Assembly: GCF_003918875.1 (NCBI RefSeq)
Contig: NW_025767081.1
Location: 434,001-498,000 of the forward strand
Length of the DNA: 64,000 bases
Direction of reading: 5' to 3'
Source: Haliotis rubra
Lineage: Eukaryota
Shown here piece after piece: positions 6,426-58,611 of the stretch; positions within the stretch are counted from its first letter, which is position 1; every line of letters starts with the position of its first letter. The notes under the pieces are model-generated. The model was not told the DNA's origin. It worked only from the letters and a program-made list of their open reading frames with translations, and made no database searches. The translations under genes were made by a program, and so were the position numbers.

Positions 6426-6467
6426 TATATGAATGCCCTCTTATGTCTTGCTTTATTCTCTTATAGC

Positions 6468-24234: not shown

Positions 24235-25752
24235 TTAATTGTCCCTTGGTCTGGCAGCCCTCCATCCAGCGTGTAGTTGTTTCCGTAGTTCAGATACAAG
24301 TTTCTTTTCAGCAGTGTTATAGGCCAAGTTAAAGTTTTCCTCGGGGTCCTTAATATGGTCGTACAACTCAATACCATAAACTTTGTTCCAGTCCGGTTTA
24401 TAGAGAGGTTTCCTGTCAAACTTCACCCATTCTGTGTATCTGTATTTATCCGTAGTCATGCTGTAGCCCATCTGGTGACCTCCGTCTTCAGATCTTGGGT
24501 ACTGAGAGAACACAGCCTTCTTCCAGTTGGGACTTGCTGGATCTTTCATCAGAGGTATCAAACTGTTGCCTTCAGTGCAGACTAGAACGTTGGTGGAGTT
24601 TTCTGGACACAGATTAATAGGAGGTAGACCTGCAGCTTCTACCAGAGTAGGAAACAGATCCACAAACTCGGTGAGTTCTTCAGTCACAATGCCCTTGTCT
24701 GTGAGACCCGGAACATGCACCATCATAGGGGCGTGGGTGGCGATGTCAAAGTCCGTGTGTTTGCACCACTCACCGTGTTCCCCCAGTTGCCAACCGTGAT
24801 CTCCCCAGAAGGAGATGATTGTGTTGTTGGCCAGGCCTTGATTCTCCAGCTCTTGGACAACACGTCCCAGCTCGTAGTCTGTGTAACTGAGGGCGCTGTA
24901 GTAGGCTCTCCTCAAGTTGAGGATGACATCGTTTGGGAGTGTGGTGTTGATGTCTCCTGTACCGTTAAGTTTCCGAATATCAACGTAGTTTCTAAGCTCT
25001 CCATAGCTAGACCATGCGATTTCCGGCATCTTGTCTGGAGCATATGGGTTAGCTGGGAGACTGACGGAGGACTCTGGGTACAAGTCAAAGAACATCTGTG
25101 GTGCCACAAAAGGAAGATGAGGTTTGTGGAATCCTTGGGCGATGAAGAAAGGACGTTCTCCAGATCTAGCTTGAGGGGCCGCTTCTCTGATCATGTTAAT
25201 GGCATGATCAGCATTCTGGGTGTCTTGAAGTGAGTTGTTCTTCAGAAGATCCATCGGCACATTCATCCAACTCACCTTTTCTTTATACACAAAGGTATTG
25301 GCTTGCGACCCTGACTCAAAATATGGATCTGTCCAGGAGATCGGGTCGTTGTTATCGGATGCATGTCCAGGGTGGAAAATCTTACCCGATCCTATCGTCC
25401 TGTAGCCATGTTCCTTGAAATACTGAGGGATGGTGGTGAAGTTCCCTCCCACATCTCTCCAATACACTACCAGATCATACACATGGGTTGTGTCCGGTCT
25501 TCGTCCTGTGAGGAGAGATGATCTGCTCGGGGAACACACAGCCTGCTGAACATGGGCTCTCTTCAACAGAAGACTCTTCCGAGCGAGGGCATCAAGGTTT
25601 GGTGAATGCATCGGAGGATGGACAGGACTGGGGAAATCTTTTCCTTCAAAAATGGATAGCTCCGGCCTCATGTCATCTGACACCAAAAACAACACATTCA
25701 TACGAGCCCGGGCGGCAGTCACCGCCAGCAGCAGAAGCGTCACTTTCAGCAT
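24235..25752 (-). CDS. IDS: Iduronate 2-sulfatase-like sulfatase, copy C (intact, intronless, 505 aa)
   Basis: Single uninterrupted ORF with signal peptide, CSPSR motif, DD, GKIFH, HKPH, GDHG..GEHG.W.KH, ELYD...DPEE..NLA C-terminal motif, and several N-x-S/T sequons. Confidence 0.95.
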   Translation of the reverse strand: MLKVTLLLLAVTAARARMNVLFLVSDDMRPELSIFEGKDFPSPVHPPMHSPNLDALARKSLLLKRAHVQQAVCSPSRSSLLTGRRPDTTHVYDLVVYWRDVGGNFTTIPQYFKEHGYRTIGSGKIFHPGHASDNNDPISWTDPYFESGSQANTFVYKEKVSWMNVPMDLLKNNSLQDTQNADHAINMIREAAPQARSGERPFFIAQGFHKPHLPFVAPQMFFDLYPESSVSLPANPYAPDKMPEIAWSSYGELRNYVDIRKLNGTGDINTTLPNDVILNLRRAYYSALSYTDYELGRVVQELENQGLANNTIISFWGDHGWQLGEHGEWCKHTDFDIATHAPMMVHVPGLTDKGIVTEELTEFVDLFPTLVEAAGLPPINLCPENSTNVLVCTEGNSLIPLMKDPASPNWKKAVFSQYPRSEDGGHQMGYSMTTDKYRYTEWVKFDRKPLYKPDWNKVYGIELYDHIKDPEENFNLAYNTAEKKLVSELRKQLHAGWRAARPRDN

Positions 25753-32036: not shown

Positions 32037-33270
32037 CTTCCTCGTTGACTGTATCAGATGAGGCGTTGCGTTCGATTCTAAATGGAGGGTTTGATCCAAT
32101 ACATCAAGATTTTGTACTGGAGGATATCTCTAGCGTATTCTGCGATCCATGGTGTCCCAAAAATGCCCTAAAGGATTGAGATCTAGTCTAAATATCAGTT
32201 GGGGTAAGGTAGAGTAAGTAAGAAATCACCAAGGCCACTACCTAGCATTGTCGTTCATGAAGACTGGCCTTGTGTTCAGGATGGTCATCGAAATGTGGTA
32301 CAACACTCATGTCTAGGATGACAATGCTGTACCGTCGTCCTTTAAAATTTTGTCTGATCGTTACAAGGTCATGTTTACAGTAATGTGAGTCCCTTCCCCA
32401 AACCACCATCAATGACCCTTCCACCCCCACCCAACCGTTGTTCATTCCGTTGTTCATATGCAGTCTTTCTGTGGCGCCAAATTCCAGCTCGGTCATCAGT
32501 CATGAATAATAAAAATCGGTCTCCGTCCGATCAGTGGACCCTTCCCCATGATATCCAATTCCAGGGACGTCGAGTATGACACTAAATTAGTTGATCACTG
32601 GATTGTCTAGTTCAGAGACGATTATTTACAGAACGCCACCATGTAGCTGGAGTTTTGCCGAGTGCGGCGTTAAACAACAAACCAACCAACCAACACTAAG
32701 TCAGTTATGCTGCTATGTGTTTAGGAGATAACAACGGACGCATCTGACAGGTCATCTAGTTCTATGCCTGGTCGATTTCAGGCGATTTCTGTTGAACAAA
32801 CAATGATGTGGAAGACACTCTGGTTTAAACATGCTATTTGACATGAACGGATGAAGTCTTGTGATTCTGAGAAGGGCCTTATCCTCTCAAGGATTTGTCA
32901 CTCGTGGTCGGCCCGAAGTCCTTAACACCATTAGTTTGCTAATGTTTTCTGAGCAGCTTTCAGTTGAAGAGGCCGCCATACTTGCTCATCAACAGCAAAA
33001 TCGATCGATTGAGTTCCCGAGCAATAAGAACAGTTTACTGAAACTTCATGTTTGCCTTATGACGGATACATGGATTCTCGCCTTTGATAGTAGCACGTGC
33101 ATGTCTAAAATCAATGGTGAGTTCCAAGGGTAATAGTAATTATGCAAATATACAAAACTGTGATATCAATATAAATGGATATAGAGAGGTTAAACATCAT
33201 AGCAGTTGCGATATTTTTGCCCATGTGTATAATTTACAAAGCCTTTCTCATCCGGTGTTTTGTCGTTTCA

Positions 33271-33436
33271 GGGGCGGTGGGGTAGCTTAGTGGTTAAAGC
33301 GTTTGCTCGTCACGCCGAAGACCCGGGTTCGAATCCCCACATGGGTACAATGTGTGAAGCCCATTTCTGGTCCTCCCCGCCGTGATGTTGCTGGAATATT
33401 GCTAAAAGCGGCGTAAAACCAAACTCAGTCAGTCAG
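33271..33436 (+). mobile_element. SINE family 1
   Basis: Full length, flanked by TTTGTCGTTTC repeats. Confidence 0.88.
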
Positions 33437-34190: not shown

Positions 34191-34205
34191 GTCCCCACTT
34201 TCACA

Positions 34206-34813
34206 ATGTGGAGTCAGGTTGTGTGTTTGTTTCTGACCGTAGTCTGTGTCTCAGGACAAGCTGATTTAGGTCACAGTTACACTGTTGACAAACAACCTTT
34301 GAATGAAACAGCTTTGTTTGTGGCCGACGCTCTGTACAAACACCCCAAACTGTTCCGGAAGTTGTTAAACATCAGCGCTGCAATGCAGCCATTCTTGTCA
34401 GAGATCGATGACCCGAAAATATCTGTCATGTTCGATCATTTCCTTGATGTCCTTCCTGCGATGCTGCGGTCAACCTACTTCATCAACGCCGTGCATGTCG
34501 TTGCAGATGAGCTGCATGGCGTCAACGTTAGCGACGTGTTCGACTACCTCCAGAACAACCATTTTTCCCCTGACGACCCTGCTGCTAGACAGATGGTGAC
34601 TGGTGCTGTCTTCGATAGGGTGGACAAGGTGAGGACTCTTCAAAGACTCCTCACTCTCAGTAGCGCCCGTGACATCCTTCCCCCTCACCGCCAACGACAG
34701 TGTCACACCACGTTGCTACAGTCACATGATGAACTTCGTCGACGCAGTTGCCGGTGTACAGGTCCCACCAAGAGGGGACATGAACTTCACCTTGGTACCT
34801 TGGGCACTGAAAA
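34206..34813 (+). CDS. Exon 1: signal peptide, N-terminal helical region and start of the NRF domain
   Basis: MWSQVVCLFLTVVCVSG signal peptide; after a 1-bp shift in the C-run it continues LTANDSVTPRCYSHMMNFVD...PWALK; donor A|gtaagt. Confidence 0.75.
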
Positions 34814-37800
34814 GTAAGTGCACTGTATTAATGCTAATATTGCTGATACATTGTAATACTGCTACATCCTCACTGTAAACACCGATAAGAAAGTAATTTC
34901 GCAGCGAGACCCCCAGGGTTGAGGTGAGGTGAGGTGAAATTGGGTTTTACGTCGTGCTTGAGAATATTTCGCTCATATGACGACGTGCAACTGATTGAGG
35001 AAAATGACATACTTACACAATGTTACCTTTGGTCGTGCAAAGTTGAGCTTGGGACTTGAAACCATTGGTTTTGCGAACAACATATGCTATGTTACCTTGG
35101 GTCGAGGAAAGTAAGACTTGAGCTGTGATACCTTGAGTTATGAAAAATAGGGCTTATGCCATATAGCCGTCAGTTGTAAAATGTTGGATTTATGCCAGGG
35201 TTGTGAAAATGGGACTTGCGCGATATTAACTTGGGATGTGTAATGGCAGGGAGTACATATCCACTGTCGCATCCATATCTAGTGCCCTTTGTTTTTACTC
35301 TACACCCCACTGTCGATACTGTCCTACATATATTTATATAAATTGTCATCGTATCCTGACAGCTTAGGGGGTAGTCTGGTGGGCAAAGCGTTCGTTCGTC
35401 ACGCCGAAGACCCGGGTTCGATTCCTCACATGGGTACAATGTGTGAAGCCCATTTCTGGTGTCCCCTGTCGTGATATTGCTGGAATATTGCTAAAAGCGG
35501 CGTAAAACGTAACTCACTCACCCACTGACGGCGTCGTTCGTTGATCATGCTATCAGTCATTGGTTTAGTTGGCCCAGTGAAATACATTTGGGAATTAAAC
35601 AGTATTATTCTCTCACTTCATTTTCAGTGCTAGACTCCTACGGCAAGCTGCCTAGTGGAATTTACGAGAGAAATCTACACTGGCAGGGTTCACCGGGTGA
35701 ATGTAGGGGCATACGCGCGCAGATGAGTGCTGGAGTTGTCCTTGGTAATACAACGCTTACCTCCCCTTTTGACTTCAAAGGAAAGTACTGTCGAGCTGAG
35801 TTTCACCATCTCTCTTGGGTTGCGAACATCTTACAAATGGTATGTAAACGCTTTGTGTGTAACGTGGAACACCTTCATCTGGACACGTTTTGAACTGTAG
35901 AACTATGACATCACTAATCGTTGAGAGGCATTAATACTGTCGTCTAGATTAAGGAGGTTTCGCTTTATGTAGAGTGAGTGAGTTTAGTTTTACGCCGCTT
36001 TTAGCAATATTACGGAGGGGGACACCCGCTTTATATAGATGTAGACGTGATATCCAAAGACAATTGATTGTTTATTGAATAACCTGTAGCACATGTGGTG
36101 TGTCTTTCAGCAAATGACTTTTTTCAAATTATGCACCTAGCAGTCAATGGGTACCCGGTAGTGTAAGATGGTAATGTCACTGTAACCTTTTCACGCTTCA
36201 CAGGCACATCTTTGGTCGCACACTTGACCGGAGCCTGATGTTTATTAACTCGTTTAGTACTCGTCGTCGTAGTAGTACTATTGCTTTTGATTTCTCCTAA
36301 TTTAAGATTTCCGATAGACCGGAACATTCCAACGTTTTTTCCTTGGAACATGTAAAATATTTACAAATTATTGTGTTAAATCAATCCTGACATATTTCTT
36401 GCGAACCAATTCTTTATGAACGTTATCATAAGATGAAATAGGATGAAAAACGATTGTGTGTATTTTGACAATCTGGTGAGCTCCAGAACTTGTTGGATGC
36501 CTGGTAATATCCATGACGTCATATCAAAACCATATATGAATCAAAGTCTGTGCTGTGGATTAACAGCATCAAACGACGATGATGGATGCACCAGCATCTG
36601 TTCCAAGAGGGAGAAATGATTAACACTATGGTTGTAACTCAATGTGTTTATTGAAACACATAAATCTGCTTGTCTAACATTGTTATGTGGCAGAGAAGGT
36701 ACAAAGTGCTGACTCGACAGATATGATAACCAGCATGCCTCATATGTCATATATCATTGCCACTTCCTGCTCCCGACAGTGCCCTACAACAACAGATACA
36801 CAATGTTCTATATTGTTCTTTTGGCAGATCAGTAGAGAGGTTGTGTTTATAAAAGTGCCCAAACTCTAACATTTAATGTGTTGACGTTTTAATTTCAAAC
36901 GTGATACACTTGAAGTTATATATGCTTGTATCAAATGGTTGTTTCAAAACTTTTATTTATTGCATTTGCAAGGCAGAGAGGCGATGAAAAGAGTTTTCAG
37001 GACAGGATGTGAGTGAGTGAGTGAGTTTTGTTTTACGCCGCTTTTAGCAATATTCCAGCAATATCACGGCGGGAGACACCAGAAATGTGTTTATCGTTAG
37101 AGGTGACATACGCATTCAGGTGGTCAGGTCTGACGACAATGTCAATGCATCATTTCTTTGTAAGATTAGACAGAGTCGAGTCAGTTCACATTTGAAATAT
37201 TACTGGATTGTGCATGGTTGAACGTGAATGTCATGCTAGTGACATGACGTACTGGTATAAAACATGCTATTCAGAAGAACCCTCAATATATGGACACCCC
37301 ACAATCAAGTGACATACTTTGCCTTTGTCTAAATTGATTTTCTGCCGTTGTCTTGGTTATGATTCCAAGCGATGTTGTCAGCGAGCATCCTAGGTACCTC
37401 TTGGTAAGGGTGCTATAATGGGTGAATAAGGTTTCTGGACGCCACTTTTGGTAAATGTATTTGAAGGGATTATTAATGTAAATGAAACTTGCATTGAAAT
37501 ACATTATATTATAAACCCAGCACGGGGCATCCTCGATAATCTCCAGGGTATACGTTACGATCACTCTCCACTACTATTATCTAATCTCCAGGGTATACGT
37601 TACGATCACTTTCCACTACTATTATCTAATCTCCAGGGTATACGTTACGATCACTCTCCACTACTATTATCTAATCTCCAGGGTATACGTTACGATCACT
37701 CTCCACTACTATTATCTAATCTCCAGGGTATACGTTACGATCACTCTCCACTACTATTATCTAATCTCCAGGGTATATGTAGGGTATACGTTACGATCAC

Positions 37801-40800
37801 TCTCCACTACTAACGTATACCCTGGAGATTATCGAGGAGCACAGGGTAGCAAGTAAGTTCACTCTGGACTTTTCCGGCCTATTTAGGATTACTTTTGTTG
37901 AACACGTCGCCAGCAACCCATGCTTGTCACCTGACCGAATAAGGTGCCAAGGCTGTGAGTTTGCTGTGACCCCAAGTGGGCTAGCCAAGTGGTTAAGGTG
38001 TTCGCTCGTCACGCCGAAGACCCGGGTTCGATTCCTCACATGGGCACAATATGTGAAGCCCATTTCAGGTGTCCCCCGCCGTGATATTGCTGCAATATTT
38101 CCCAAAACGGCGTAAATCTAAACTCACTCACTCTGTGGTCCCAGGGTGGCGGAGACTGTTCAGAGCCGAGGTTAACAAGCCAGGTCCCAGCCTGACGAGG
38201 GCTTTACAATGCCTACCAAGACAGTGTGTCATTCTTTCATCTCTTTTGTGAATTAATTCAATACTGAATTGTGTTGTAACTTCACAAATAAACTATGGAG
38301 GTGTGACTCATAGTAAGTCTATGTTTCTATACATCGATGTGCGTTAGGAGGGGAGATATTGGAGCAGAGTATTTCATTCGTTACCATTCGCCCTTTTCCG
38401 TGACGAGCACTCGGCCTGTCCCGGAACAACACGAGTTGGTTACGAACGACAGTGCCACTGCTCCAAACGCACGAGGTTTGCACGGACAAATATCGCTGTT
38501 GTCACGTGACTGGAAACACATGGGATTTCAAACTGCCTTCCGAAATAAAACAGTCGTGACGTACCACGGAAGACTTTTAGACCCTAACTACCTTTATTGT
38601 ACGGACGACATGACTGAACAAGAAAGTCCAGACGAAAATGATGTTCACCTGCGTTTTGGGAATTCGCCAAGAACACAGAAGTTGACGGAAGGTTGGAAAT
38701 TTGTTGTTGGCTTTGTTTGATATGCTCCAAATTTGGGTTGCAGTATTTTTTGTGTTCAAAACCTCCCAAGAATCTAAAACCTCAATAGGGCCCTTTCTGG
38801 ATCAGAAACAGCCTGTGTTATACTCAAACGTAGGTCTTGCAATGATCAGCACATTTGTCTGTCTCCCGTTCTCGAACCTACTTTACTATAGATTTCGGGG
38901 CGGTTGGGTAGCTTTGTGGTTGAAGCGTTCGCTCGTCACGCCGGAATATTGCTAAAAATGCGGCGTAAAACTAAACTCGCTCCCTACTATTGGTTTAATA
39001 TGTGATAGAAAGTAATGCATTTATAAAATCGTTGATATGCTTCATTTAACAAAATACCAAAGCAGGCAACAGTTGTCTGCTTGTTCATTAGATTTGGCCC
39101 CGTCAGATCATCATTGGAGGCATGTTGTCGGATCTAGCCCATCAGTTCAGATTTTAAGTATTGTTAAAGTTATATTTTCATGATGCCACTCCTAGATCAA
39201 CTGACCTGTTTTCCAGGATGACGCCCTGACGTGGGGCATGTGTGTCCCTGACACGTGTAGCGAGAAGGACGTGGAAGGACTGTTCCAGTTAGGTAGGTAC
39301 TTCTTCATTGAACCAGTAGATAAAGTCAGTCCAGTCGATCGTTGGACTCCAGGTATCATAACGCCAAGGATTTTTAAAGGGGGATCTTAATGTTTCCCTG
39401 CCCAGCGTTTAGCAAATCAGGCAGGGGACATAACTAGAACTGATTGGATAGCAGTCCATGTTATAATACGGAATGGTGGGCTGCCGCACTTTCAACCCGG
39501 AAGTAGTCCCAACTAGTATTTGCGTGGGAAAGACTTCCGCCCGTATCCCCTCTTAAATTTCATACTTTTTGTCAAATCATATCATCTGAATTATATTCCT
39601 CATCTGATAAGGATGAGTTTTAAAATGTTTCTTTAATTGTATCTGAACATACTGAAGACATATCCCTCTTCTGAAAATGCCACTCAAAGAATTTTTCCCT
39701 CACCGTTAAAATTTAGGGGGGATACGGGCGGACGTCTTACCCAATTTTGAGTGACTTTGTGTTTGGTCATTTTCTTCAAGTTCACTGCGATTAATGAATT
39801 CTCACATCAAACGTGATGCGTGTTCACGTTCCACACCCCTCAATGCGTTGTTTTGGGCTGACTTGCTAAATTAGCGTAGATCACTGGATTGTTTGGTCCA
39901 GAGTGTAAGGAATTTTGTTTATACGGAGTACAGGTGTTTACAGGGATCCACCTAATTGTCATGGACAGGTGTGTATGAGAGAACATTTTGTTTCATAAAT
40001 GGAATTTTGTCAAAGTTATTTCTTTTATACATTTACACTGCACTCATTGCACTATTTTCAAAGCCTCCTCCTCGGTCCTGATTTTCGGTGGTATACAAGT
40101 TACTTCTCCAGCGTCATAACATTAGGTATAAACATATTAATATGAATTGGAATTTAGTGATGTTGGGATGTTGACTGCTGCAGCCTTAGGGCAAATATTG
40201 GCCTCTGTGCCGGTCTTGACAAACCTCTGGAGTTCAGTCTTTCAGACTGAGGAACGAGTGTTCACGGTTGACTTGAATGGGGGAGATGGGTATGCAAGGC
40301 ATTCAGAATATCTAACGCAACACCCACCAAGAACAAGGTCGTCAGCAACCCAAGTTTGCGGTCTTCTTTACGATTGTCGTGCGGCCTTCTTTACGATTGT
40401 CGTTTGTCATCGTATTGCAATTGAGTAGATCGAGGCTCATGTCAATCATTGGTTTGTCTGGTCCAGACTCGATTTACAGACTGCCGCCATGTAGCTTGAG
40501 TAGAGCCGAGAGCGGCGTTTGACACCCCCAAGAAGCAAGCTGAAACAACACTATATAGACGATGAGGAACGCATCCTATGGTGCTATGCTAGAATGTTTT
40601 GACATTTAAAAGCGTAACTTGCGTAAGTAATTGACCCGAAGACACGATGGAATGACCCGGAAGTGATATAGGATTTCGTTCAAATGTGCTTGATCTGTAA
40701 TTTGACCTAAAGTACTGTCGGAAATATAAATGTGAAAAAGGTTTTCTTCTATCTATGATTTATGTAGTTAAACTAAGTTCGGCCTAACTATAGGGAGATA

Positions 40801-43800
40801 GGAAACGTAAAACATGGACTTTACTGAGGAGAGATTAGTGCAGAAATGAGCAATGTGGTTTATTTTGTAAGTCCAAAGCGACTTATTTGGAACAGACCAT
40901 GGCTTTATGCAAATTAGTGTGTGGTATTGTATAACAAAGGACACTTTTTAAATGCCCATTTTGAAATTAGACTTGGCTTAATTATAAACGATAGCCGACG
41001 TAAAAAAATGATTTTAATACTGAAACTAAGGATGTAGCTGCAATGGAGTCACACTATCACTTTAAAAAACAAGTAGGAGGGGTCGTCTCAAAAGCAAAAC
41101 CAGGACGGGTGTCTCAGACGGTTGTTGGGGTCGGGCGGGTTAATAGAGATATCACTGAGATAGAATATAACTTTATGAAAGACACGTTAGGTGTTAAGCA
41201 ATAGATGAGACATGAACGCAAAACAAAAAGCATAAAATATCTTTGAGATGAGCCCCTTGTGCCTGTAGGCAGCACATGCATTTTATGCCAGGTGAGTCGT
41301 CATACCTGGCTGAGCGACCTTGTTGCCATCTATAGTCGGATCTATTGTTTTAAACAGCTATTCGTACTTTTTCTAAGTTTATATCCGATTTCACGAGTAA
41401 ACATGCTTTTCTGGATATCTTATTAGCATCCCACTGAACGCCCAGTTAGGCCGATGTGGGTTATTGGAACATATTCGAATTCTGTTTGTAATTGTGTAAA
41501 GTTTAGGGATACAGTGTAACAGCCTATTTCCGACCGTACTGTAGTGCTTCTGTAGGACAAGTCTTCCTGACCTGTAACATCCTGGTTTGTACAAAACATC
41601 ATTTTGAAGTGCATTTTGGTTATGTGTAGATTGCGAGACAAAATATGTAACTAATATGTAGATGTTCTTAAATATATTTTATATATTGCAGGTTTTATGA
41701 AAAAATTCAAGATAACCCCTGATAATGTCTCCTGTTCAGACAGTCAGAAGCATAATGGTCATGTGCACGTCACATCCGGTACGACCACGTGAGTACATGG
41801 CATCCAGGATACCTCCGTGATAAGAGTCGATCATGTCTGAGAAATATTCTTGACCTATTAATATCGGGTTATATAACTGGTGTTCAGGAGGCCGGACCCT
41901 GTTCCTCAAAGCGATCGTAGCGCTAAGATGATTGTAACACCCATCCTCCCATTACGACAGTCGTAGCGCTAAGATGATTGTAACACCCATCCTACAACAG
42001 TCGTAGCGCTAAGATGATTGTAACACCCATCCTCCAACAGACTTACGACAGTCGTAGCGCTAAGATGATTGTAACACCCATCCTCCAACAGACTTACGAC
42101 AGTCGTAGCGCTAAGATGATTGTAACACCCATCCTCCAACAGACGTACGACAGTCGTAGCGCTAAGATGATTGTAACACCCATCCTCCAACAGACTTACG
42201 ACAGTCGTAGCGCTAAGATGATTGTAACACCCATCCTCCAACAGACTTACGACAGTCGTAGCGCTAAGATGATTGTAACACCCATCCTCCAACAGACTTA
42301 CGACAGTCGTAGCGCTACGATCGCTTAGAGGAGGGGGACCCTGGGCCCACCTGCACAAAGCGATCTTGTAGCGACTATCTAAGATGATTGTAGTTACGAC
42401 GCCTAAGATCCTTTGTGCCCCAACAAGCTGGTTTGGCACTTGGAACGACAGTCGTAAAGAAACATGTTAAAACATCCTTATAAGACAGAATATATAAAGG
42501 ACTCACATAAACCCTAGGGGGATCACATAAACCCTAGGGGTAAAAATACATAAATCACTAACTGGCATCGTTATAAATGAAACCCCGTCATTAAAACTAC
42601 TCATTTCGACCTTTAATTGACTTAAATCGACCTTTTTGACAACAGTGCACAATTCTCACCCGCGAACGAAATTTCAACCAATCAGAGCGGCGCGACTCTG
42701 TGACGTCATATGAGGAATAGCTTTGAGGGCCGATGCAGAATTCATCTACATTTTAGGGGTAAATTATCTTGTTTACAGGCTTGTATAAACCTGAAATCGT
42801 GACAATTGTTGTGGAAAATGAAAGCTATATGTTCTCACAATCTACTGTCATTTAATTTTGTCTCCTGCTTTGCCTAGTTTCCGAGTTACAACTTGTTTTC
42901 ATAGACGCTTCTGTCACAATTGATTGGTGTCGTTAGGCCCTATTTGTATAATGACTGATCCAAATTGATCCCATTTCTGTGTTTTTTTACCTCGATATTT
43001 AATCATGTCATGTAAAAATCTGTTTGTATTCTCAAAACAGTGTCGGCCCATAAGTTTTCACATGCAATACAGCAATTAATACTCCCTTGTTGTAACCCGT
43101 GTTAGGTGGTATAAACCTACACATGTTATTTGTCATCATTCACTTGATGGTCAGTTAATGAATTTATAACAGGTATAATTAGTGGTAACACACTTAGATT
43201 ACCCGACAAAGGTTCCCATTTGGCATTTCTTGTGTCTGGAGTAAATATTCAACATTATAAACATCGATCAAAGGATTAACCGATAACACGCTGATTGATT
43301 AATTACTTTTATCTTACACAGAGGAATTGTCAAAAGGTAGTGTTTATGTATGTAGATTTACTAATCTATACTGAATACACTCTGCCGTGTCGGTGTCTGC
43401 GTAAAAACAACGTCCTTCTTTCAAAGGATTAACCGGCAATACATTGATTGATTGCCCATTATTGGCTAACTAAATTACTGTTTTTAATGAAAGGCGGACA
43501 TTATGCAATTAGTTGCCAGGTGTGCTATCTTGGGTGACCAATGAGACTATACACCAATACCTGAAAAGATTTATCACTTTTTTCGTATATTAAACTGTTA
43601 AAAGACACATCATTTGGAACAGTTTTGTGGATATTGATGGATACATTCCTCAAACAAGGTAATGGCCTGATATTGTTCCTATAACTTTAATCTGTTTTAA
43701 TTTTAATATTTGCATTTTTTTTTTTATTCATTTGTCGTAGCATTCAACAGAATCATTGTTTTCGCCGTGAAGTGTAATGAGACAGACAACATACACTAGG

Positions 43801-46800
43801 GTGTGTGTGCGAATTATGATTCACATTGGCAAACTATAAAATGTCTAGATATTACAGTTCTGTTATAAATTCACTATAAGTATCAGCAGATCGTCAGCTT
43901 TTTATTTAGTTTCAAAATGCATAAAAGTATGATAATAAACTAATTAGGATTATAAGACCAAACATAAAGACGCACATTGACTAGTATCTACATACTGGTG
44001 AGTGGACATTAACCATGTGAATGTAGCAAGAAATTTATCGCGCAGTATTGTGACTTCGACCCCACCTCGCTTCCGTGGAAGAAATCGTTATGTTATAAGT
44101 TGTGTCATGCAAAATCCTTTTGGTTATGATTCCAATACATATTTAACTACGAGTAGAAAGTAGTTTTGATTTTCTAACTTGATGAAAACAAACTATAATC
44201 TCATTAATTCTAACAGACTTTACGATTTTCAAAAATGGCGGCGCCCTGTCGGGAACATCCGCCAGTCTGTGGATAAATGCTATTTAGGTTTGTTTTCACC
44301 GAGTTACAAAATCAAAACTACTTTCTACTGGTAGTAAAATATGTATTTTTTATTGATGGCCAATAGGATTTTGCATGACATAGCGTATAACATAACAATT
44401 TCTCCTGGCAGCGAGGTGGGTGTCAATATAATACTACTTACAATATTATTGTTACTTCGACCACAACCTCACTTCCAAGGAAGAAATCGTTATGTTACAA
44501 GTTGTGTTATGGAAAATCTTTATGGTCATCAATCATATACATATTTTACTATAACTAGTAAGTAGTTTTGATTCTTTAACTTCCGTGAAGCGATCTGAAC
44601 ACAAGTAAGATATCGTTTCAGGCTTCCACAACGCTCGCTTCGCACTCACAAACATAACCCATTTAGCACGAACTGCGGGGTCCTGTGGAAATCTGTGCAT
44701 GGTGACACCATCACCCGACCCCTAGGAGCAATTGACGACAAAGCAACGATTCGGCATGTCGTCGTTCATGTCGAGAAATCATCAAAATGATGAGCGTGCT
44801 ACACACTTTCTATACAACTAACTGAAAATCGTTCCTCATATGACGTCACTGCAGTGCTCTGGCGACAGAGTTACGTAACCTGTCTGTGGTTTCGTTGGCG
44901 GGCGAGAGGGAAGCAGGTGACTTTTTGGCCACTTTTAATCGCTCGGTATTAATTAACCACAAGTTTTTAAAGAATAACTTTGGTGTTCCGCATAAGACTA
45001 ACCACAAATCTTTCATATGTAATGGTTAAAAGAGTAACAAAAAACAAAGTTTAGTGGTTCTTTAAAGCGTTGGCTCGTCACGCCGAAGACCCGGGTTCGA
45101 TTTCTCACATGGGTACAATGTGTGAAGGCCATTTCTGGTGTCCCCCGCCGTGATATTGCTGGAATATTGCTAAAAGCGGCGTAAAACTAAACTCAGTCCT
45201 CATTTATAGAATGAATTCTTGTGAACAAGTCAGGGAAGTGGGGTAGCATACTGGTTAAAGCGTTCGCTCGTTGCGCCGAAGACCCGGATTCGATTCCCGA
45301 CATGGGTTCACTGTGGAGACCATTTCTGGTGTCCCGCGCCTGAATGAATGGTGCATGAATATTGCTAAAAGCTGTGTAAAACTATACTCTAATCGTCACG
45401 ACCGACATATTTCCAGTCGACCCAGTGTTGCAACAACAAACGCCTTCGACTTGCTTATAAGGTCATATTCTGACTGCAAAGATCGGATCAGGCCAGACGA
45501 ATTGATGAACTGTTTGTTCTCTCCCTGTGACATCGACAGTGAGTACCTTTCCAGAAATACCAGGCCTACCAAAGAAAACTTTCCCACTGTGCAGAAAAAC
45601 GCAGAAAAGCCCACATTAATCGTGGAAATAGCAACATAAACATAATACCTCGCTACTGAAACAGTGAAAACGGCAACTTTAAATCGCTAACACTGCATCA
45701 TAAAACGAGGAGCCCGCAACTTCGATTTTGCGCATGCGCACATGGAAGAGGAAGTCTCGACCGCATGTTGACATTTTCCAGCTTGGACAAAAGTTACATT
45801 TCTTTTTAAGTATTTCTGTTGTGTTATTTGTCATTTATCATCATGATACTTGTGTGCACACTTGTTTAGTTTACTTTCCATTCGTATGAAACAACTGACA
45901 GCGATTATTTCGACATATTTAATACTTTTTTTACGCGAGGCGATTCACGGTTGCTCGGAAATTGGAAAGAAGCCCGGATCGTAATGCACATGCGCAGTAG
46001 AGGTCAAAGTTCGCTGATTACTATGAAAGCTATGAAAATGTTGCAGTTTCATAGTTTTTCGTTGCAGTTTTTACTGTTTCAGTAGCGAGGTAATGTGTTT
46101 ATGTTGCTATTTCCACGATTAATGTGCGCTTTTCTGCACAGTGGGAAAGTTTTCTTTGGTAGGCCTGTATACCTAGTTGCCAGATCTATACAGAAGTGAC
46201 TGGGGTAGCCTAGTGGTTAAAGCGTTAGCTCGTGACGCCGGAAACCCGGGTTCGATGGGTACAATGTGTAAAGGACCTGGTGTCCCCTACTGCGATACTG
46301 CTTGAATATTGCCAAAAGCGGCGCCATGAATGCGTAAAGCTTTAATCGATATTTAGGAATCACAATAGCACTGGGAAAGGGCGTAGTTTATAGTTACCTC
46401 CTTGGAATCACGTCATGTTGACAGTGAAAAAAAAGGTTAAAGTCTCCTTTGCCATACATAGCTTTGTTTTGCAGAAAATGGTAACATCAGCAAGCGCGAA
46501 TGGCAGACAGAAAGCCACAGACTTGGAATGGACATGGCTGACCATGGAAAGATTGCGCGAACCTTCATCGAGTTGGACATTAACAAGGACCTCCAAATAG
46601 ACGCACCTGACCTCGAGTATCTCTTTGCCTTCTTTGACGACACCGGTGAGAGGTCCCCTTTTCGACATCCATTCCACAAGACTAGAAACGTTTTATTACA
46701 AATGTTAACACAGTAACTTGAGTCCTTTGGCTAGAATGACACGCAAGTGTGGCTTGAAATGGAGAGAGCAATAATATTATTTTCCCTTTTTCAGGCGACG

Positions 46801-46853
46801 GGCTTCTCAGCCTTCCGGAGTACATTTACAATTGGCAGTCTCTCATCTCGTAG
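34206..46853 (+). CDS. Predicted 7-exon gene: secreted NRF-domain (NRF-6 N-terminal-like) plus EF-hand calcium-binding protein, ~447 aa
   Basis: Exons 34206-34813, 35628-35839, 39217-39292, 41692-41788, 45417-45538, 46475-46645, 46795-46853; all introns GT-AG with phases 1,0,1,2,1,1 matching; needs removal of one C in the C5 run at 34680-34684; AATAAA at 46941. Confidence 0.7.
35628..35839 (+). CDS. Exon 2: NRF domain core
   Basis: ttttcag|TG completes WALK-M-LDSYGKLPSGIYERNLHWQGSPGEC...FKGKYC, the NRF-6 family motif D..GK.PSG...N..W.G...EC; donor ATG|gtatgt. Confidence 0.85.
37530..37838. repeat. MITE whose interior expanded into a 45-bp minisatellite (~6 units)
   Basis: TIRs TCCTCGATAATCTCCAGGGTATACGTTA and TAACGTATACCCTGGAGATTATCGAGGA enclose tandem CTCCAGGGTATACGTTACGATCACTCTCCACTACTATTATCTAAT. 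Confidence 0.85.
39217..39292 (+). CDS. Exon 3: NRF domain C-terminal motif
   Basis: ttttccag|DDALTWGMCVPDTCSEKDVEGLFQL-G|gtaggt; G.C.P..CS..D is the NRF-6 family motif. Not present in the supplied ORF track. Confidence 0.85.
41692..41788 (+). CDS. Exon 4: end of NRF domain and start of Thr-rich linker
   Basis: tattgcag|(G)FMKKFKITPDNVSCSDSQKHNGHVHVTSGTT-AC|gtgagt; phase 1 in, phase 2 out. Confidence 0.7.
41895..42340. repeat. Harbinger-like MITE expanded into a 51-bp minisatellite (~8 units)
   Basis: Unit GACAGTCGTAGCGCTAAGATGATTGTAACACCCATCCTCCAACAGACTTAC bracketed by inverted AAGCGATCGTAGCGCTA and TAGCGCTACGATCGCTT. Confidence 0.85.
45417..45538 (+). CDS. Exon 5: linker and start of EF-hand domain
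   Basis: atttccag|T-RPSVATTNAFDLLIRSYSDCKDRIRPDELMNCLFSPCDID-A|gtgagt; phase 2 in, phase 1 out. Confidence 0.75.
45561..46167. mobile_element. Non-autonomous DNA transposon with ~120-bp imperfect TIRs in intron 5
   Basis: CAGGCCTACCAAAGAAAACTTTCCCACTGTGCAG... and ...CTGCACAGTGGGAAAGTTTTCTTTGGTAGGCCTG. Confidence 0.85.
46475..46645 (+). CDS. Exon 6: EF-hand motifs
   Basis: ttttgcag|AA completes the canonical loop DIDKNGNISKRE; second loop DINKDLQIDAPD; ends FFDDT-G|gtgag. Confidence 0.85.
46795..46853 (+). CDS. Exon 7: last EF-hand and stop codon
   Basis: ttttttcag|GC completes DDTGDGLLSLPE-YIYNWQSLIS-TAG; AATAAA at 46941-46946. Confidence 0.85.
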
Positions 46854-48179
46854 TTCTTGAGAACTGATCTTTCCAACAGAAGAGACGAAATAGAACGCAG
46901 GAATAACATCGTTTATTCTACAATATGGTTACAGTTTAAAAATAAAATGCGGTTGCCATCCCTGACCTCAGCTTTGTTACCATTGTCGCCAGACATCCTC
47001 TCTTCAACAGCCATCTGAAAACTGACATCAATCATTTCTTTAGCTTCTGCATATAGGATCACACTACAACATGTCTCACGTCGTGCTTGTGAGTTTAGTT
47101 TAAGCAGCAATATGGCGGTGATCAGCATCGATCTGCGCAATTGGGAACCGATGACATGTGTCAACCAAGTCAGCGAGCCTGATCCCGTTAGTCGCCTTTT
47201 GTGGCTGAAGATCTTGCCATCCACTTCAAAAGATTAAGAAACACTGTGCACACCCAGGAATATGAAATCAGAGATCTTTGTTGTTTAAAAATATCCCGTG
47301 GAAAACACAACGAACCATCATGCAATCAGTCAATATTTTCCATGGATACTACTGACATTTACCAAAGTTCCCTCCACGAACCTGACACCAGATCGACTTT
47401 ATTGCGCAAAACTCTTGAGGTGAACGACTTGATCGTTTAGAACTTCAACAAAGCATAGAATTCTGCATGGTGTGACATATTGCATACACTATTGTAAAAT
47501 ATAAATAGCTCATCCTCCATTGTGGGATATCGTCTTACATGTGAAACGTTTCCAAAAAGTATATGTCCGCTCCATTACTTTTCAACGAATGGAGTGCTAG
47601 ATATAGGTGAGTTTAGTTTTACGTCGCTTTCAGCAATATAACGGCATTTTGACAGAAATGGGCTTCACACGTTGTGCTTATGAAAATACTTCGAACCTGT
47701 AATTTAACGTGACGAGGTAATATCCAAGAGGCTACCCCATTCCGTTAAAAAATGTGACTCGGCTCCATGGTTTCTTTTAAGGAATGGAAATTGTCCAAGA
47801 TATCTTACCCATCACTTAAATGCTGAGCAGCAGATACCATTACTACTCTTTGCTAGTTGTATTGAAACAGTCAACAATGGCTTCAAACAAGAAAGAAAGT
47901 GGGGACATCTACATTGAATGGTGCTGGAATCAAACGGGATGCTGTTTTTGTTGATCCAGCTTGGATTATGAACAGAACAGTTGGTGAACAAGAAGGGACA
48001 TGATATCGTACAGAATATAGTTTGGGTGTATAGGGTCCGTAAGTAGGTCACGGCATTTCGTGAAACCTTAGTAGTTCCGGTGACAAACGTCGTTTCATAC
48101 CGTTTGGAATGGTCTCGTGCTTAACAATAAGGAACTGCTAATCCTTGCATAACAAATTTCCGATTTAACCATCCCCAAA

Positions 48180-49104: not shown

Positions 49105-49946
49105 TACTAGCCACATAAAGAAACTGTGCACACAGAAAATTCCTTCAGAATTGGATTACAACACAGAAAAGACGAAATGTTGTGGACACTTTATAAGCTG
49201 AAGTATCGGGCCACAACAACATGTCAAAAAGAACATGAACATTATCCGTAACGATGACGTCAGAAGTTCAAAATTGTGCCGGGGGTCACACGTCAAAGTC
49301 AATAACGGGGATGACCATCATGCGCGTGAAGCACAGCAGTGCATGGATGACGCATGGAGGCTACCAAATGAGCACTGAAGGCCTGGGGAACGGTTTGGGA
49401 CGTGGTCACTGCCGTCTGGAACCAGTGTCTGATATGAGTCACCCGAATCCATCTGTCCTGTCTTAGCGTCGTTAGTCGGGGACGCCCAGAACGTGGGTTG
49501 TCGGCAAATTATTACTGTTTCCATAACATCTGACCAATGCAGATATCGTGTTACGATGACATTGGAAATGTGCTGCCACCTGTTGTTGGCTCATGCCTGC
49601 TCGAACAATTCCAATGGCTTCATGACGTTGAGCAGATGTTAATCTTGGCATGATGTGCATGTGACTTCTCATGTGAATTTGTGAACATTTGGATGACCAA
49701 AGATCAAGCTTTCGACAGTGACAGCAATTTCTGAGTTCCACATGTGTGCAGCTGCACAGGCTGCACGTGCAGTAACACATTGCAAGTCCATAGGCCACCA
49801 TCAATGACGTCACGTCGCCTGGCACCTGCATGAGCATTTGATTGTCTCCAATACTTGCTATGTTCGCACCTTTATTTATGTATAAAGACACTGTCTGCCT
49901 ATCTTTATATTTTCTATGTGCACAGTTTCTCTATGTGGCCAGTATA
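49105..49946 (-). mobile_element. Internally deleted Tc1/mariner transposon
   Basis: ~36-bp TIRs (TACT(A/G)GCCACATA.AGAAACTGTGCACA.AGAAAAT) with TA flanks; MPRLTSAQRHEAIGIVRAGMSQQQVAAHFQCHRNTISAL from ATG 49651 is a paired-like HTH, then frameshifted GRPR.TT..QDR. Confidence 0.85.
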
Positions 49947-57100: not shown

Positions 57101-58611
57101 CTATTCGGGTAAAGCTGCCCTCCAGCCTGCATGCAGTTGTTTGCTGAGTTGAGCCACCAGAGTGCTGTAGGCGGCATCATAAGCCAGGTTCTTGTTTTCC
57201 TGAGGATCGCCATAATGGTCGTACAGTTCCACACCAAACACTTGGGTCCAGTCCGGTTTGTACACAGGTTCTAGGTTGAATTTGACCCACTCTGTGTATC
57301 TGTAATGATCGGTGGTCATGCTGTAGCCCATTTGATCTCCGTTGTATTCATTCCTCGGATACTGGGAGAACACAGCCTTCTTCCAGTTGGGACTTGCTGG
57401 GTTTGTTATCAGAGGTATCAAACTAGAGCCTTCAGTGCAGACTAGAACGTCGGTGGAGTTTTCTGGACAAAGATTAATAGGAGGTAGACCTGCAGCTTCT
57501 ACCAGAGTAGGAAACAGATCTACAAACTCGGTGAGTTCTTCAGTCACAATGCCCTTGTCAGTGAGACCCGGCACATGCACCATCATCGGGGCGTGGGTGG
57601 CGATTTCAAAGTCCGTGTGTTTGCACCACTCACCGTGTTCCCCAGTTGCCAACCGTGATCTCCCCAGAAGGAGATGATTGTGTTGTTGGCGAGTCCTTGA
57701 TTCTCCAGCTCCTTGATAATTCGTCCGACTTCGTAGTCCGTGTAGCTGAGAGCGCTGTAGTAGGCTCTCCTCAAGTTGAGGATGACATCGTGTGGGACTG
57801 TGGTGTTGATATCTCCCGTAAGATTTAATTTCGCAATGTCATCGTATAATCTGAGCTCTGTATAATTAGTCCATGCGATGTCCGGCATCTTATCAGGAGC
57901 GTATGGGTTGGCTGGAAGTCTGATGGAGGACTCGGGGTACATGTCAAAGAACATCTGTGGTGCCACAAAGGGAAGATGAGGTTTGTGGAATCCTTGAGCG
58001 ATGAAGAATGGACGTTCTCCAGATCTAGCTTGAGGGGCTGCTTCTCTGATCATTTTAATCGAATGGTTATTATTCTGGGTGTCTTGAAGGGAGTCGTTCT
58101 TAAGTGCATCCATTGGCACGTTCATCCAGGAATTATGCCCCTTGTATACAAAAAAAGTTGAGTTAAACCCTACTTCAAAATACGGGTCTGTCCAGGAGAT
58201 CGGGTCGTTGTGGTTAGAAGCATGTCCAGGGTGGAAAATCTTTCCAGCTCCTATCGTTCTGTAGCCGTGTTCCTTGAAATACTGAGGGATGGTGGTGAAG
58301 TTACCTCCTACTTCTCTCCAGTAAGCATGTAGATCATATACATGGGTAGTGTCCGGTCTTCGTCCTGTGAGGAGAGATGATCTGCTCGGGGAACACACAG
58401 CCTGCTGAACATGGGCTCTCTTTAACAGAAGACTCTTCCGAGCGAGGGCGTCAAGGTTTGGTGAATGTATCGGAGGATGTACAGGACTGGGGAAGTCTTT
58501 TCCTTCAAAAACAGAGAGTTCCGGCCTCATGTCATCAGCCACTAAAAACAACACATTCATACGAGCCTGGGCGGCTGTCACCGCCAGCAGCAGAAGAGTC
58601 ACCCTCAACAT
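57101..58611 (-). CDS. IDS: Iduronate 2-sulfatase-like sulfatase, copy D (intronless; 1-bp deletion at C-run 57640-57643; ~503 aa if corrected)
   Basis: Signal peptide, ADDMR, CSPSR, GKIFH, HKPH, GDHG, WCKH; C-terminus and 3' flank (~56570-56970) are homologous to copy A. Confidence 0.88.

What the first reader, a model, noticed from the sequence alone, without database searches (positions are those of the whole stretch)
34206..46853. Hidden 7-exon gene fusing an NRF lipid-associated domain to an EF-hand Ca2+ domain, with no acyltransferase
Seen: seven exons join through canonical GT-AG sites with every phase matching, and three motifs are completed only across junctions (WALK|MLDSYGK, DID|KNGNISKRE, DDT|GDGLLSLPE). 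The product is signal peptide, ~150-aa helical region, Cys-containing NRF domain, TSGTTTRPSVATT linker and three recognisable EF-hand loops (two canonical). Established: in NRF-6/OACYL proteins the NRF domain is normally followed by a multi-pass acyltransferase-3 domain, and small secreted EF-hand proteins occur in mollusc shell and secretory proteomes. Inference: exon shuffling replaced the membrane enzyme with a Ca2+-binding module, giving a soluble Ca2+-regulated lipid or ligand carrier. I do not know this architecture from any described family. It sits inside the sulfatase cluster, and the ORF track misses it.
Basis: partly seen in the sequence, partly recalled or inferred. Interest (0 to 1): 0.85.

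Follow-up and report, generated by a model that had tools for sequence, protein, structure and literature searches.

The report
Abalone gene joining NRF and EF-hands
This is a real seven-exon abalone gene, already in RefSeq as an "uncharacterized protein", whose secreted product carries the outer (NRF) domain of a membrane acyltransferase family followed by calcium-binding EF-hands instead of the enzyme; three abalone species have it, but this assembly has a one-base frameshift in exon 1.

Summary
The window is Haliotis rubra. They equal RefSeq XP_046579996.1 (LOC124287484, 274 aa). "Every phase matching" is wrong. Inside exon 1, the ATG, signal peptide and N-terminal part are in one frame and the NRF start is in another. 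The cause is one extra C in a C5 run at 34680-34684; exon 1 is 608 nt here and 607 nt in relatives.

Intact relatives of 446-457 aa exist in H. asinina and H. rufescens (two tandem copies). They share the seven exons, the intron phases and the architecture: signal peptide, helical N-terminal region, NRF domain, Thr/Pro linker and EF-hands. None has an acyltransferase-3 domain. dN/dS is 0.15-0.5 in every region.

New here: the NRF-part introns match canonical NRF-6-like genes of a spider and a beetle. The exon 4 donor (phase 2) lies where those genes have a phase-2 intron at the start of their first membrane helix. So the enzyme exons were probably replaced by EF-hand exons at an old intron.

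RNA evidence in H. rubra is blank. Function is inferred only: a secreted, non-enzymatic calcium-binding protein. No paper names it. Moderate interest; a new variant of a known kind.

The parts
34206..34813 (+). Exon 1. It holds the ATG, the signal peptide (MWSQVVCLFLTVVCVSG), the ~145-aa helical N-terminal region and the start of the NRF domain up to ..PWALK. The donor is phase 1.
   Evidence: tblastn of the H. rufescens relative covers 34200-34682 in one frame and 34678-34809 in the next.
34680..34684 (+). C5 homopolymer where the reading frame breaks. The intact relatives imply one C fewer here.
   Evidence: Exon 1 is 608 nt against 607 nt. H. asinina and H. rufescens read D-I-L-P-L in frame at this place.
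35628..35839 (+). Exon 2, the NRF domain core (MLDSYGK..ECRG..KYCRAE). It enters in phase 1 and leaves in phase 0.
   Evidence: PF20146, E 5e-8 on this exon alone.
39217..39292 (+). Exon 3, the NRF domain end (DDALTWGMCVPDTCSEKDV). It enters in phase 0 and leaves in phase 1.
   Evidence: PF20146, E 3e-5.
41692..41788 (+). Exon 4. It holds the last NRF cysteine (NVSC) and the start of the Thr-rich linker (TSGTT). The donor CAC|GTGAGT is phase 2, at the place where canonical genes begin TM1.
45417..45538 (+). Exon 5. It holds the rest of the linker (RPSVATT), the degenerate first EF-hand (SDCKDRIRPDE) and the first three residues of the second EF loop (DID).
46475..46645 (+). Exon 6. It holds the rest of loop 2 (KNGNISKREW), loop 3 (DINKDLQIDAPD) and the start of loop 4 (DDT).
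   Evidence: (100% match to P0001 residues 200-255).
46795..46853 (+). Exon 7. It holds the rest of loop 4 (GDGLLSLPEY), the C-terminus and the TAG stop at 46851-46853.
46941..46946 (+). AATAAA, a candidate polyadenylation signal 88 nt after the stop.
   Evidence: Read directly. It was not tested, and no RNA contig lies here.

Best explanation
The finding is a genuine seven-exon gene of Haliotis rubra (RefSeq LOC124287484). It belongs to a small family seen so far only in abalone. The proteins are about 447 aa long.

Architecture: signal peptide, then a family-specific, probably all-helical N-terminal region of ~145 aa, then a complete six-cysteine NRF domain, then a Thr/Pro/Ser-rich linker, then a C-terminal EF-hand domain. 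The EF-hand domain has one degenerate site and three recognisable loops, of which one or two fit the PROSITE pattern. There is no membrane segment and no acyltransferase-3 domain.

Origin (inferred from intron positions): a canonical NRF-plus-acyltransferase-3 gene lost everything downstream of its old phase-2 intron at the start of TM1. It gained three EF-hand exons there, from a gene like the small secreted EF-hand proteins of molluscs.

The break in exon 1 of this assembly is one extra C in a homopolymer. It is more likely an error of the Nanopore-based assembly than a real lesion (about 65:35).

Function (inferred, not shown): a secreted, glycosylated, non-enzymatic protein. Its NRF domain binds whatever NRF binds in the enzymes. 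Its EF-hands are filled with Ca2+ outside the cell, so their role is structural or matrix/mineral-related rather than switching.
For: Gene model and architecture:
- Exon model and phases.
- An independent NCBI model has identical borders.
- Relatives of 446-457 aa exist in H. asinina and H. rufescens, with the same 7 exons and phases 0/1/0/1/2/1/1.
- NRF scores E 1e-20 to 7e-19 and EF-hand families are above or near cut-off in all four proteins. PF01757 is absent.
- No hydrophobic window beyond the signal peptide, 6 conserved NRF cysteines, 7-8 N-glycosylation sequons.

Conservation:
- With one C of the run left out, the product is 447 aa without stops, 83% identical to H. asinina.
- dN/dS is 0.15-0.49 in every region between non-converted pairs.

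Origin:
- Introns at WALK|M (phase 1) and 8 residues before the CxPDxC motif (phase 0) are identical to the spider NRF-6-like gene; the first is also identical in the beetle gene. A phase-2 intron lies 14-16 residues after the last NRF cysteine in spider and beetle, at the start of TM1. In Haliotis it lies 17-22 residues after that cysteine.

Against hidden or separate parts:
- No acyltransferase-3 exons in the window, L001, L003 or L004.
- Intron 4 is only 433 bp in H. asinina and holds no conserved alternative first exon.

Frameshift as artefact:
- All four frameshifts in genes of this window lie in G or C homopolymers.
- The assembly is a Nanopore hybrid (PMC6774278).

EF module:
- The closest EF-only kin is a 158-aa Pomacea protein.
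- Mollusc EF-hand clusters of 133-145 aa match residues 315-446 structurally.
Against: - No RNA evidence. Four transcriptome-like runs of the species gave zero depth on exons 4, 6 and 7. No RNA run held the NRF exons.
- The frameshift could be real. A rough three-point estimate by hand gives omega of about 0.5 on the H. rubra branch against about 0.2 on the H. asinina branch.
- The other gene models are also automatic predictions.
- The donor of the EF-hand exons was not found, so the direction and mechanism of the replacement are inferred from intron phase alone.
- The third NRF intron is 8 columns away from the spider's, and the phase-2 intron is 3-8 residues off.
- Structure models were poor (pLDDT 34 and 60) and gave no fold match. 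Nothing supports any particular ligand.
Confidence: 0.75

Rival explanations
1. The family is real, but the H. rubra copy is a true, recently disabled pseudogene or a null allele. On this reading the extra C exists in the animal, and only an N-terminally truncated, unsecreted 274-aa product could be made, or none at all.
For: - The frame break at 34680-34684.
- No transcript contigs on exons 4, 6 and 7 in four runs.
- A rough branch omega of about 0.5 for H. rubra, by hand.
- Three of the four neighbouring sulfatase copies are also frameshifted, which could mean a decaying region.
Against: - This is the only lesion in 1341 nt. All splice sites, the start and the stop are intact.
- dN/dS against H. 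asinina is 0.31 overall and 0.15 in the EF part.
- Every frameshift in the window is a +/-1 change in a G/C homopolymer, as expected of residual Nanopore error.
- Contigs cannot show absence.
Confidence: 0.2
2. There are two separate genes that gene predictors and the reader joined by chance. One is an NRF-only gene ending at or near exon 4: the unspliced read-through gives ..TTT then TGA. The other is an independent EF-hand gene whose first exon was missed.
For: - If the exon 4 donor is not used, the frame stops at once.
- EF-only relatives exist in other molluscs.
- NRF-only predicted proteins of 289 aa exist in arthropods.
- No read here spans 41788/45417.
Against: - Exons 5-7 have no start codon of their own before ..ELMNC.
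- Adjacency, order, strand and phase 2 on both sides are kept in four loci of three species, although exon 4 (97 or 112 nt) and exon 5 (110-125 nt) change length, always by multiples of 3.
- Intron 4 is 433 bp in H. asinina. Its only ATG-to-GT candidates are 5-20 aa without a signal peptide. Nothing in it is conserved apart from the 90 nt next to the donor and short repeats.
- NCBI lists two H. rufescens isoforms that differ only in the exon 5 acceptor. As far as I know, Gnomon reports such variants only with transcript support; I did not verify this here.
Confidence: 0.04
3. It is an ordinary NRF-6-like acyltransferase gene whose acyltransferase-3 exons lie further away, with the EF-hand gene nested in a long intron.
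For: NRF is normally followed by acyltransferase-3 (PMC12423673, PMC12799122).
Against: - tblastn with five NRF-6-like proteins finds only the NRF exons in the 64-kb window and in the three related loci with 10-kb flanks.
- The next genes on both sides are sulfatases.
- The queries were arthropod proteins, so this test is only moderately sensitive.
Confidence: 0.01

Closest known systems
NRF-6 / NDG-4 (C. elegans), Drop-dead (Drosophila) and 'nose resistant to fluoxetine protein 6-like' proteins: N-terminal NRF domain plus acyltransferase-3 (AT3) membrane domain
   Same: - A complete NRF domain (PF20146, profile positions 1-120 of 121) lies behind a signal peptide and an N-terminal extension.
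- Same cysteine pattern and the same WALKMLDSYGK motif.
- Same intron positions and phases within NRF and at its C-terminal border.
   Different: - No acyltransferase-3 domain and no membrane helices. A Thr/Pro linker and EF-hands follow where TM1 would begin.
- There is a 15-residue insert before WALK.
- The N-terminal 145 aa have no detectable relatives outside Haliotis.
Small secreted EF-hand proteins of molluscs. Examples: Pomacea canaliculata LOC112555596 (158 aa), mollusc-only ESM Atlas clusters of 133-145 aa, and by type Hdh-SMP5 of H. discus hannai (134 aa, PMC10741955)
   Same: - An extracellular EF-hand module of about 110 aa.
- 41% identity over 63 aa to the Pomacea protein across loops 2-4, including DxNKDLxI and DLEYLF.
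- Atlas models align to residues 315-446 with TM 0.59-0.67 by the small protein.
   Different: - Those proteins stand alone behind their own signal peptide. Here the module is the C-terminal end of an NRF protein.
- Kinship to SMP5 itself was not tested, because no sequence was available by reference.
SPARC/BM-40-type extracellular calcium-binding (EC) domain
   Same: Both are secreted, have cysteines flanking an EF-hand, and carry a loop of the type DxDxNGxISxxEW. Pfam gives a weak match to the last 20 positions of PF10591.
   Different: The score of 17 bits is below the cut-off of 22. There is no follistatin or Kazal part. I do not file it here.
NRF-only predicted proteins of arthropods (an Atlas cluster of 71 members, 289 aa, named NRF-6-like isoform X2)
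   Same: They have NRF without acyltransferase-3.
   Different: They have no EF-hand. They may be truncated isoforms or fragments. This is a structural lead only (TM 0.42-0.43).

Membership tests
NRF-6/NDG-4/DRD-type NRF + acyltransferase-3 proteins | NRF domain (Pfam PF20146 / InterPro IPR006621) | tested here: met
   PF20146 scores E 7e-19 (P0001, the H. rubra model), 2e-21 (P0002), 1e-20 (P0009) and 1e-20 (P0010). All are far above the 27-bit cut-off. On single exons of the window the E-values are 5e-8 and 3e-5.
NRF-6/NDG-4/DRD-type NRF + acyltransferase-3 proteins | Multi-pass acyltransferase-3 domain (PF01757) after NRF | tested here: not met
   - No PF01757 hit at E <= 0.1 in any of the four proteins, while control NRF-6-like proteins score 1e-15 to 1e-26.
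- No Kyte-Doolittle 19-residue window above 1.6 beyond the signal peptide.
- No acyltransferase-3 exons by tblastn.
- The ORF ends at a conserved stop after the EF-hands.
NRF-6/NDG-4/DRD-type NRF + acyltransferase-3 proteins | Shared gene ancestry (intron positions in the NRF part) | tested here: met
   The phase-1 intron at WALK|M is identical in Haliotis, spider and beetle. The phase-0 intron is identical in Haliotis and spider. The phase-2 intron at the NRF/TM1 border lies within 3-8 residues.
EF-hand superfamily | 12-residue Ca2+-binding loops with canonical ligand positions | tested here: met
   - The PROSITE PS00018 pattern matches DIDKNGNISKREW in all four proteins, and DDNGDGFVNLQEF in the two H. 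rufescens proteins.
- DINKDLQIDAPD and DDTGDGLLSLPE fit a relaxed pattern.
- EF-hand_5 (26.2-28.4 bits, cut-off 25.9) and EF-hand_6 (31.7-32.1 bits, cut-off 25) pass in P0001, P0002 and P0009.
EF-hand superfamily | EF-hands in pairs (EF-hand_7, PF13499) | tested here: inconclusive
   Scores are 27.6-29 bits in P0001, P0002 and P0010, just under the 30-bit cut-off, and 32 bits in P0009, which passes. The first of the four helix-loop-helix units has a degenerate loop.
EF-hand superfamily | Actual Ca2+ binding | not testable with these tools
   This needs recombinant protein and ITC, a 45Ca overlay or similar.
SPARC-type EC domain | PF10591 above its gathering score | tested here: not met
   17.1-17.4 bits against a cut-off of 22, covering only the last 20 profile positions.
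Mollusc small secreted EF-hand proteins (Pomacea LOC112555596 type) | Sequence similarity of the EF module beyond generic EF-hand level | tested here: inconclusive
   P0007 is the best non-Haliotis hit among 1.84 billion representatives, but only at E 4e-4. The pairwise comparison gives 41% over 63 aa, E 2e-12. Its locus could not be fetched to compare introns.

The most novel reading that the evidence does not exclude
Abalone have turned the extracellular NRF domain of an acyltransferase into a free, secreted protein by swapping the enzyme for EF-hands at an old intron. On this reading the protein binds the same still-unknown extracellular acceptor (glycan, matrix or lipid) as the NRF enzymes, in a Ca2+-dependent or mineral-associated way. 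It might act in shell matrix, mucus or digestive secretions, perhaps linked to the iduronate-sulfatase-like genes that sit head-to-head with it in all three species. It would then be the first natural soluble NRF domain, and a handle on what NRF recognises.
Probability: 0.25. Interest if true: 0.6.

Novelty: new variant of a known kind. Interest (0 to 1): 0.45.

Why it matters
The NRF domain is widespread in animals (NRF-6, NDG-4 and Drop-dead; 15 C. elegans OAC proteins), but its role is unknown. The papers read here only note that it is fused N-terminally to acyltransferase-3 (PMC12423673, PMC12799122).

A naturally soluble NRF protein could be expressed, crystallised and used in ligand screens without the ten-helix membrane enzyme.

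The locus is also a clean case of domain replacement at a conserved intron: both the phase and the position are kept between molluscs and arthropods.

For annotation, the RefSeq model of H. rubra is truncated by a probable assembly error. The region shows that homopolymer frameshifts are frequent in this assembly, which matters for every pseudogene call in it.

Tried and rejected
- RNA test of the 41788/45417 junction. The runs found held only repeats of the introns. Read laying on 41050-47040 gave zero depth on exons 4, 6 and 7.
- A short intron to bridge the two frames of exon 1. GT at 34629 with AG at 34660 (32 nt) or at 34700 (72 nt) gives the wrong phase (my reading). I rejected it in favour of a 1-nt excess, given the 607-nt exon in relatives.
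- Relatives of the N-terminal 141 aa. Pfam found nothing, the Atlas nothing, and the word-based search nothing.
- AlphaFold2 on the whole protein with 5 sequences gave pLDDT 34 and is unusable. The NRF domain with 8 sequences gave pLDDT 60 and pTM 0.61. Foldseek against PDB found no hit at E <= 0.001, and the VIA-align wide search had a best Z of 2.8. No fold was assigned.
- EF region against PDB sequences. Only generic EF-hand proteins came up (mitrocomin and aequorin at E 5e-4 to 1e-3, calmodulin at about 0.01).
- The locus of the Pomacea EF-only protein, wanted for intron comparison, is not on record.
- The spliced 447-aa protein has no reference, so it was never sent to a search tool. P0001 and the intact relatives were used instead.
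- Literature. No paper names the loci or accessions, and none describes NRF together with EF-hand.
Full report
**What is in the sequence**

I rebuilt them base by base. The borders are:
- 34206-34813
- 35628-35839
- 39217-39292
- 41692-41788
- 45417-45538
- 46475-46645
- 46795-46853

Every intron is GT-AG with a good polypyrimidine tract. From the NRF start in exon 1 to the TAG at 46851-46853 the six junctions are in phase, with phases 1, 0, 1, 2, 1, 1. The three motifs completed across junctions are real.

Exon 1 is not one open frame, however. The ATG, the signal peptide and about 158 residues are in frame 0. The NRF start (..LTANDSVTPRCYSHMMNF..PWALK) is in frame +1. Frame 0 happens to stay open to the end of the exon. 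That gives the 203-aa ORF and hides the shift.

**Identity of the locus**

An exhaustive phmmer search was run with exon 6 alone (56 aa) against 1.84 billion representative proteins. It returned two strong hits.
- P0001 (100% identity, 274 aa) is XP_046579996.1, 'uncharacterized protein LOC124287484 [Haliotis rubra]'. It lies on contig QXJH01000400.1 of GCA_003918875.1. The window is therefore blacklip abalone.
It starts there because of the frame break.
- P0002 and P0008 are isoforms X2 and X1 (452 and 457 aa) of H. rufescens LOC124129262.

A further search found H. rufescens LOC124152475 (P0009, 453 aa) and an H. asinina protein (P0010, 446 aa).

All four proteins carry NRF (PF20146, E about 1e-20) and EF-hand families. 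None carries Acyl_transf_3. The gene is therefore annotated, though uncharacterized. It is 'hidden' only from a prokaryote-style ORF track.

**The frameshift**

I mapped each protein exactly onto its locus. All four loci have seven exons with identical phases.

| Exon | Length (nt) |
|---|---|
| 1 | 607 (619 in the diverged paralogue) |
| 2 | 212 |
| 3 | 76 |
| 4 | 97 or 112 |
| 5 | 110-125 |
| 6 | 171 |
| 7 | 59 |

In the window exon 1 is 608 nt. tblastn of the H. rufescens protein switches frame at 34678-34682. The local sequence is CTT-CCCCC-TC, where H. asinina and H. rufescens read Leu-Pro-Leu in frame.

With one C of the run 34680-34684 left out (done only inside a script, for comparison), the product is 447 aa with no stop. 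It is 83% identical to H. asinina, 73% to LOC124152475 and 63% to LOC124129262.

Three of the four iduronate-sulfatase-like copies in the same window also carry single frameshifts. All of them are +/-1 changes in G runs. The assembly is a Nanopore hybrid (PMC6774278).

I therefore rate an assembly artefact at about 65% and a real lesion at about 35%.

**Is it one gene?**

(a) Reads joining exon 4 to exon 5. None could be seen either way. The transcriptome-like runs of the species hold only intronic repeats of this region, and they gave zero depth on exons 4, 6 and 7.

(b) A separate first exon in intron 4.
- In H. asinina this intron is only 433 bp. Its few ATG-to-GT candidates encode 5-20 residues without a signal peptide.
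- Between species nothing in the intron is conserved, apart from the 90 nt next to the donor and short repeats.
- Exons 5-7 have no start codon of their own.

(c) NRF exons splicing to acyltransferase exons. tblastn with five NRF-6-like proteins finds only the NRF exons in the window and in the three other loci with 10-kb flanks.

Positive evidence also exists.
- Order, strand and phase 2 on both sides of intron 4 are kept in three species, although exons 4 and 5 changed length, always by multiples of three.
- dN/dS is 0.15-0.49 in the N-terminal, NRF, linker and EF parts for pairs not affected by gene conversion.
- NCBI lists two H. rufescens isoforms that differ only in the exon 5 acceptor (22402 against 22417 in L001). 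To my knowledge Gnomon reports such variants only with transcript support. I did not verify that here.

**Where it came from**

I aligned the Haliotis NRF regions with NRF-6-like proteins of a spider, a tick and a beetle, all of which have NRF plus PF01757. Then I mapped the exons of the spider (L006) and beetle (L005) genes.
- The intron at WALK|M(L/Y)D is phase 1 at the identical column in all six genes.
- The phase-0 intron eight residues before the C-x-P-D-x-C motif is identical in Haliotis and spider.
- A phase-1 intron lies 8 columns apart in Haliotis and spider.
- Both arthropod genes have a phase-2 intron 14-16 residues after the last NRF cysteine, right at the start of the first membrane helix (..GAIAV|ICLLSVFA and ..TTIIA|IIFFIGLI).
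- The Haliotis exon 4 donor is phase 2, 17-22 residues after the same cysteine. What follows is a Thr/Pro linker and EF-hands instead of TM1.

The simplest reading is that a canonical NRF-acyltransferase gene was cut at this old intron and joined to EF-hand exons with a phase-2 acceptor.

The best non-Haliotis relative of the EF part is a stand-alone 158-aa protein of the snail Pomacea (41% over 63 aa). Atlas models of mollusc-only 133-145-aa EF-hand clusters also align to residues 315-446. The donor gene itself was not identified, and its introns could not be compared.

**What it probably does**

Shown by sequence analysis here:
- an N-terminal hydrophobic signal-like segment and no other hydrophobic window
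- 7-8 N-glycosylation sequons
- six conserved cysteines in NRF
- a Thr/Pro/Ser linker
- one PROSITE-perfect EF loop (two in H. rufescens), two near-canonical loops and one degenerate loop
- an acidic EF region

Inferred:
- The protein is secreted and cannot be an acyltransferase.
- Seawater-like body fluids hold about 10 mM Ca2+ (my own knowledge). The EF-hands would then be permanently filled outside the cell, so a structural or matrix role is more likely than a Ca2+ switch.
- What NRF binds is unknown. The two papers read only state that it is fused N-terminally to acyltransferase-3. My models were too weak to assign a fold.

A 505-aa sulfatase gene lies head-to-head 6-9 kb upstream in all three species. 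That is conserved microsynteny, not evidence of a shared function.

**Distribution and novelty**

The profile search and the exon 6 search found the NRF plus EF-hand combination only in Haliotis. These searches are limited by word sharing and by the genomes held. No paper in the library names these loci or the combination.

I class it as a new variant of a known kind. It is a lineage-restricted, non-enzymatic derivative of the NRF-6-like family. It is present in databases as an uncharacterized protein and is not described in the literature searched.

Interest is moderate. The origin is clean, and the protein gives a practical handle on the NRF domain. There is no expression or functional evidence yet.

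Noticed in passing
window 16514-18027 (+), 19775-21290 (-), 57104-58611 (-); intact copy 24238-25752 (-): There are four intronless iduronate-2-sulfatase-like genes (PF00884 + PF16347). Three carry one frameshift each, all in G homopolymers: G4 instead of G5 at GDHGWQLG in two copies, and G4 instead of G3 in the third. This fits residual Nanopore error, or shared lesions spread by gene conversion.
   Followed up: partly
window 42537-45065, with an ORF at 44533-44700 (-): Intron 4 holds a repeat that transcriptome contigs of the species cover at 97-100% identity, mostly on the minus strand. It includes a THAP-domain ORF (PF05485, E 3e-5). It is probably an expressed transposon family, not part of the gene.
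   Followed up: partly
window 45050-45350 and 46200-46330 (also 35360-35500, 33260-33420, 38000-38110): These are copies of a tRNA-derived SINE (..GGGTAGCCTAGTGGTTAAAGCG..CCGGGTTCGA..). Depth in the RNA contig sets is enormous, up to 3e5. These copies, not the exons, explain why the runs 'held' the stretch.
   Followed up: partly
window about 45555-45640 and 46085-46165: Two arms in intron 5 read as inverted repeats of each other, about 450 bp apart. This suggests a foldback or MITE-like element. I saw it by eye and did not test it.
   Followed up: no
window 41969-42439 and 37448-37813: Two minisatellites in introns 4 and 2. They show in the ORF list as repeated 17-aa (51-nt) and 15-aa (45-nt) units.
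   Followed up: no
window 6433-7209 (+): An intronless 258-aa ORF with an RNase_T exonuclease domain and a PML C-terminal domain (PF25244, E 4e-16).
   Followed up: partly
window 49472-49891 (-): A 139-aa ORF with a homeodomain-like HTH_23 motif. It is likely a transposase remnant.
   Followed up: partly
L001 14188-14507 (H. rufescens, intron 1 of LOC124129262); L001 against L004: Intron 1 of this H. rufescens gene holds a partial second copy of exon 1 (50-57% identical). The two tandem H. rufescens paralogues are nearly identical in the linker and EF-hand exons (dS 0.02-0.03; 0.25 in the NRF region) but saturated in exon 1. This points to gene conversion or a partial duplication.
   Followed up: partly
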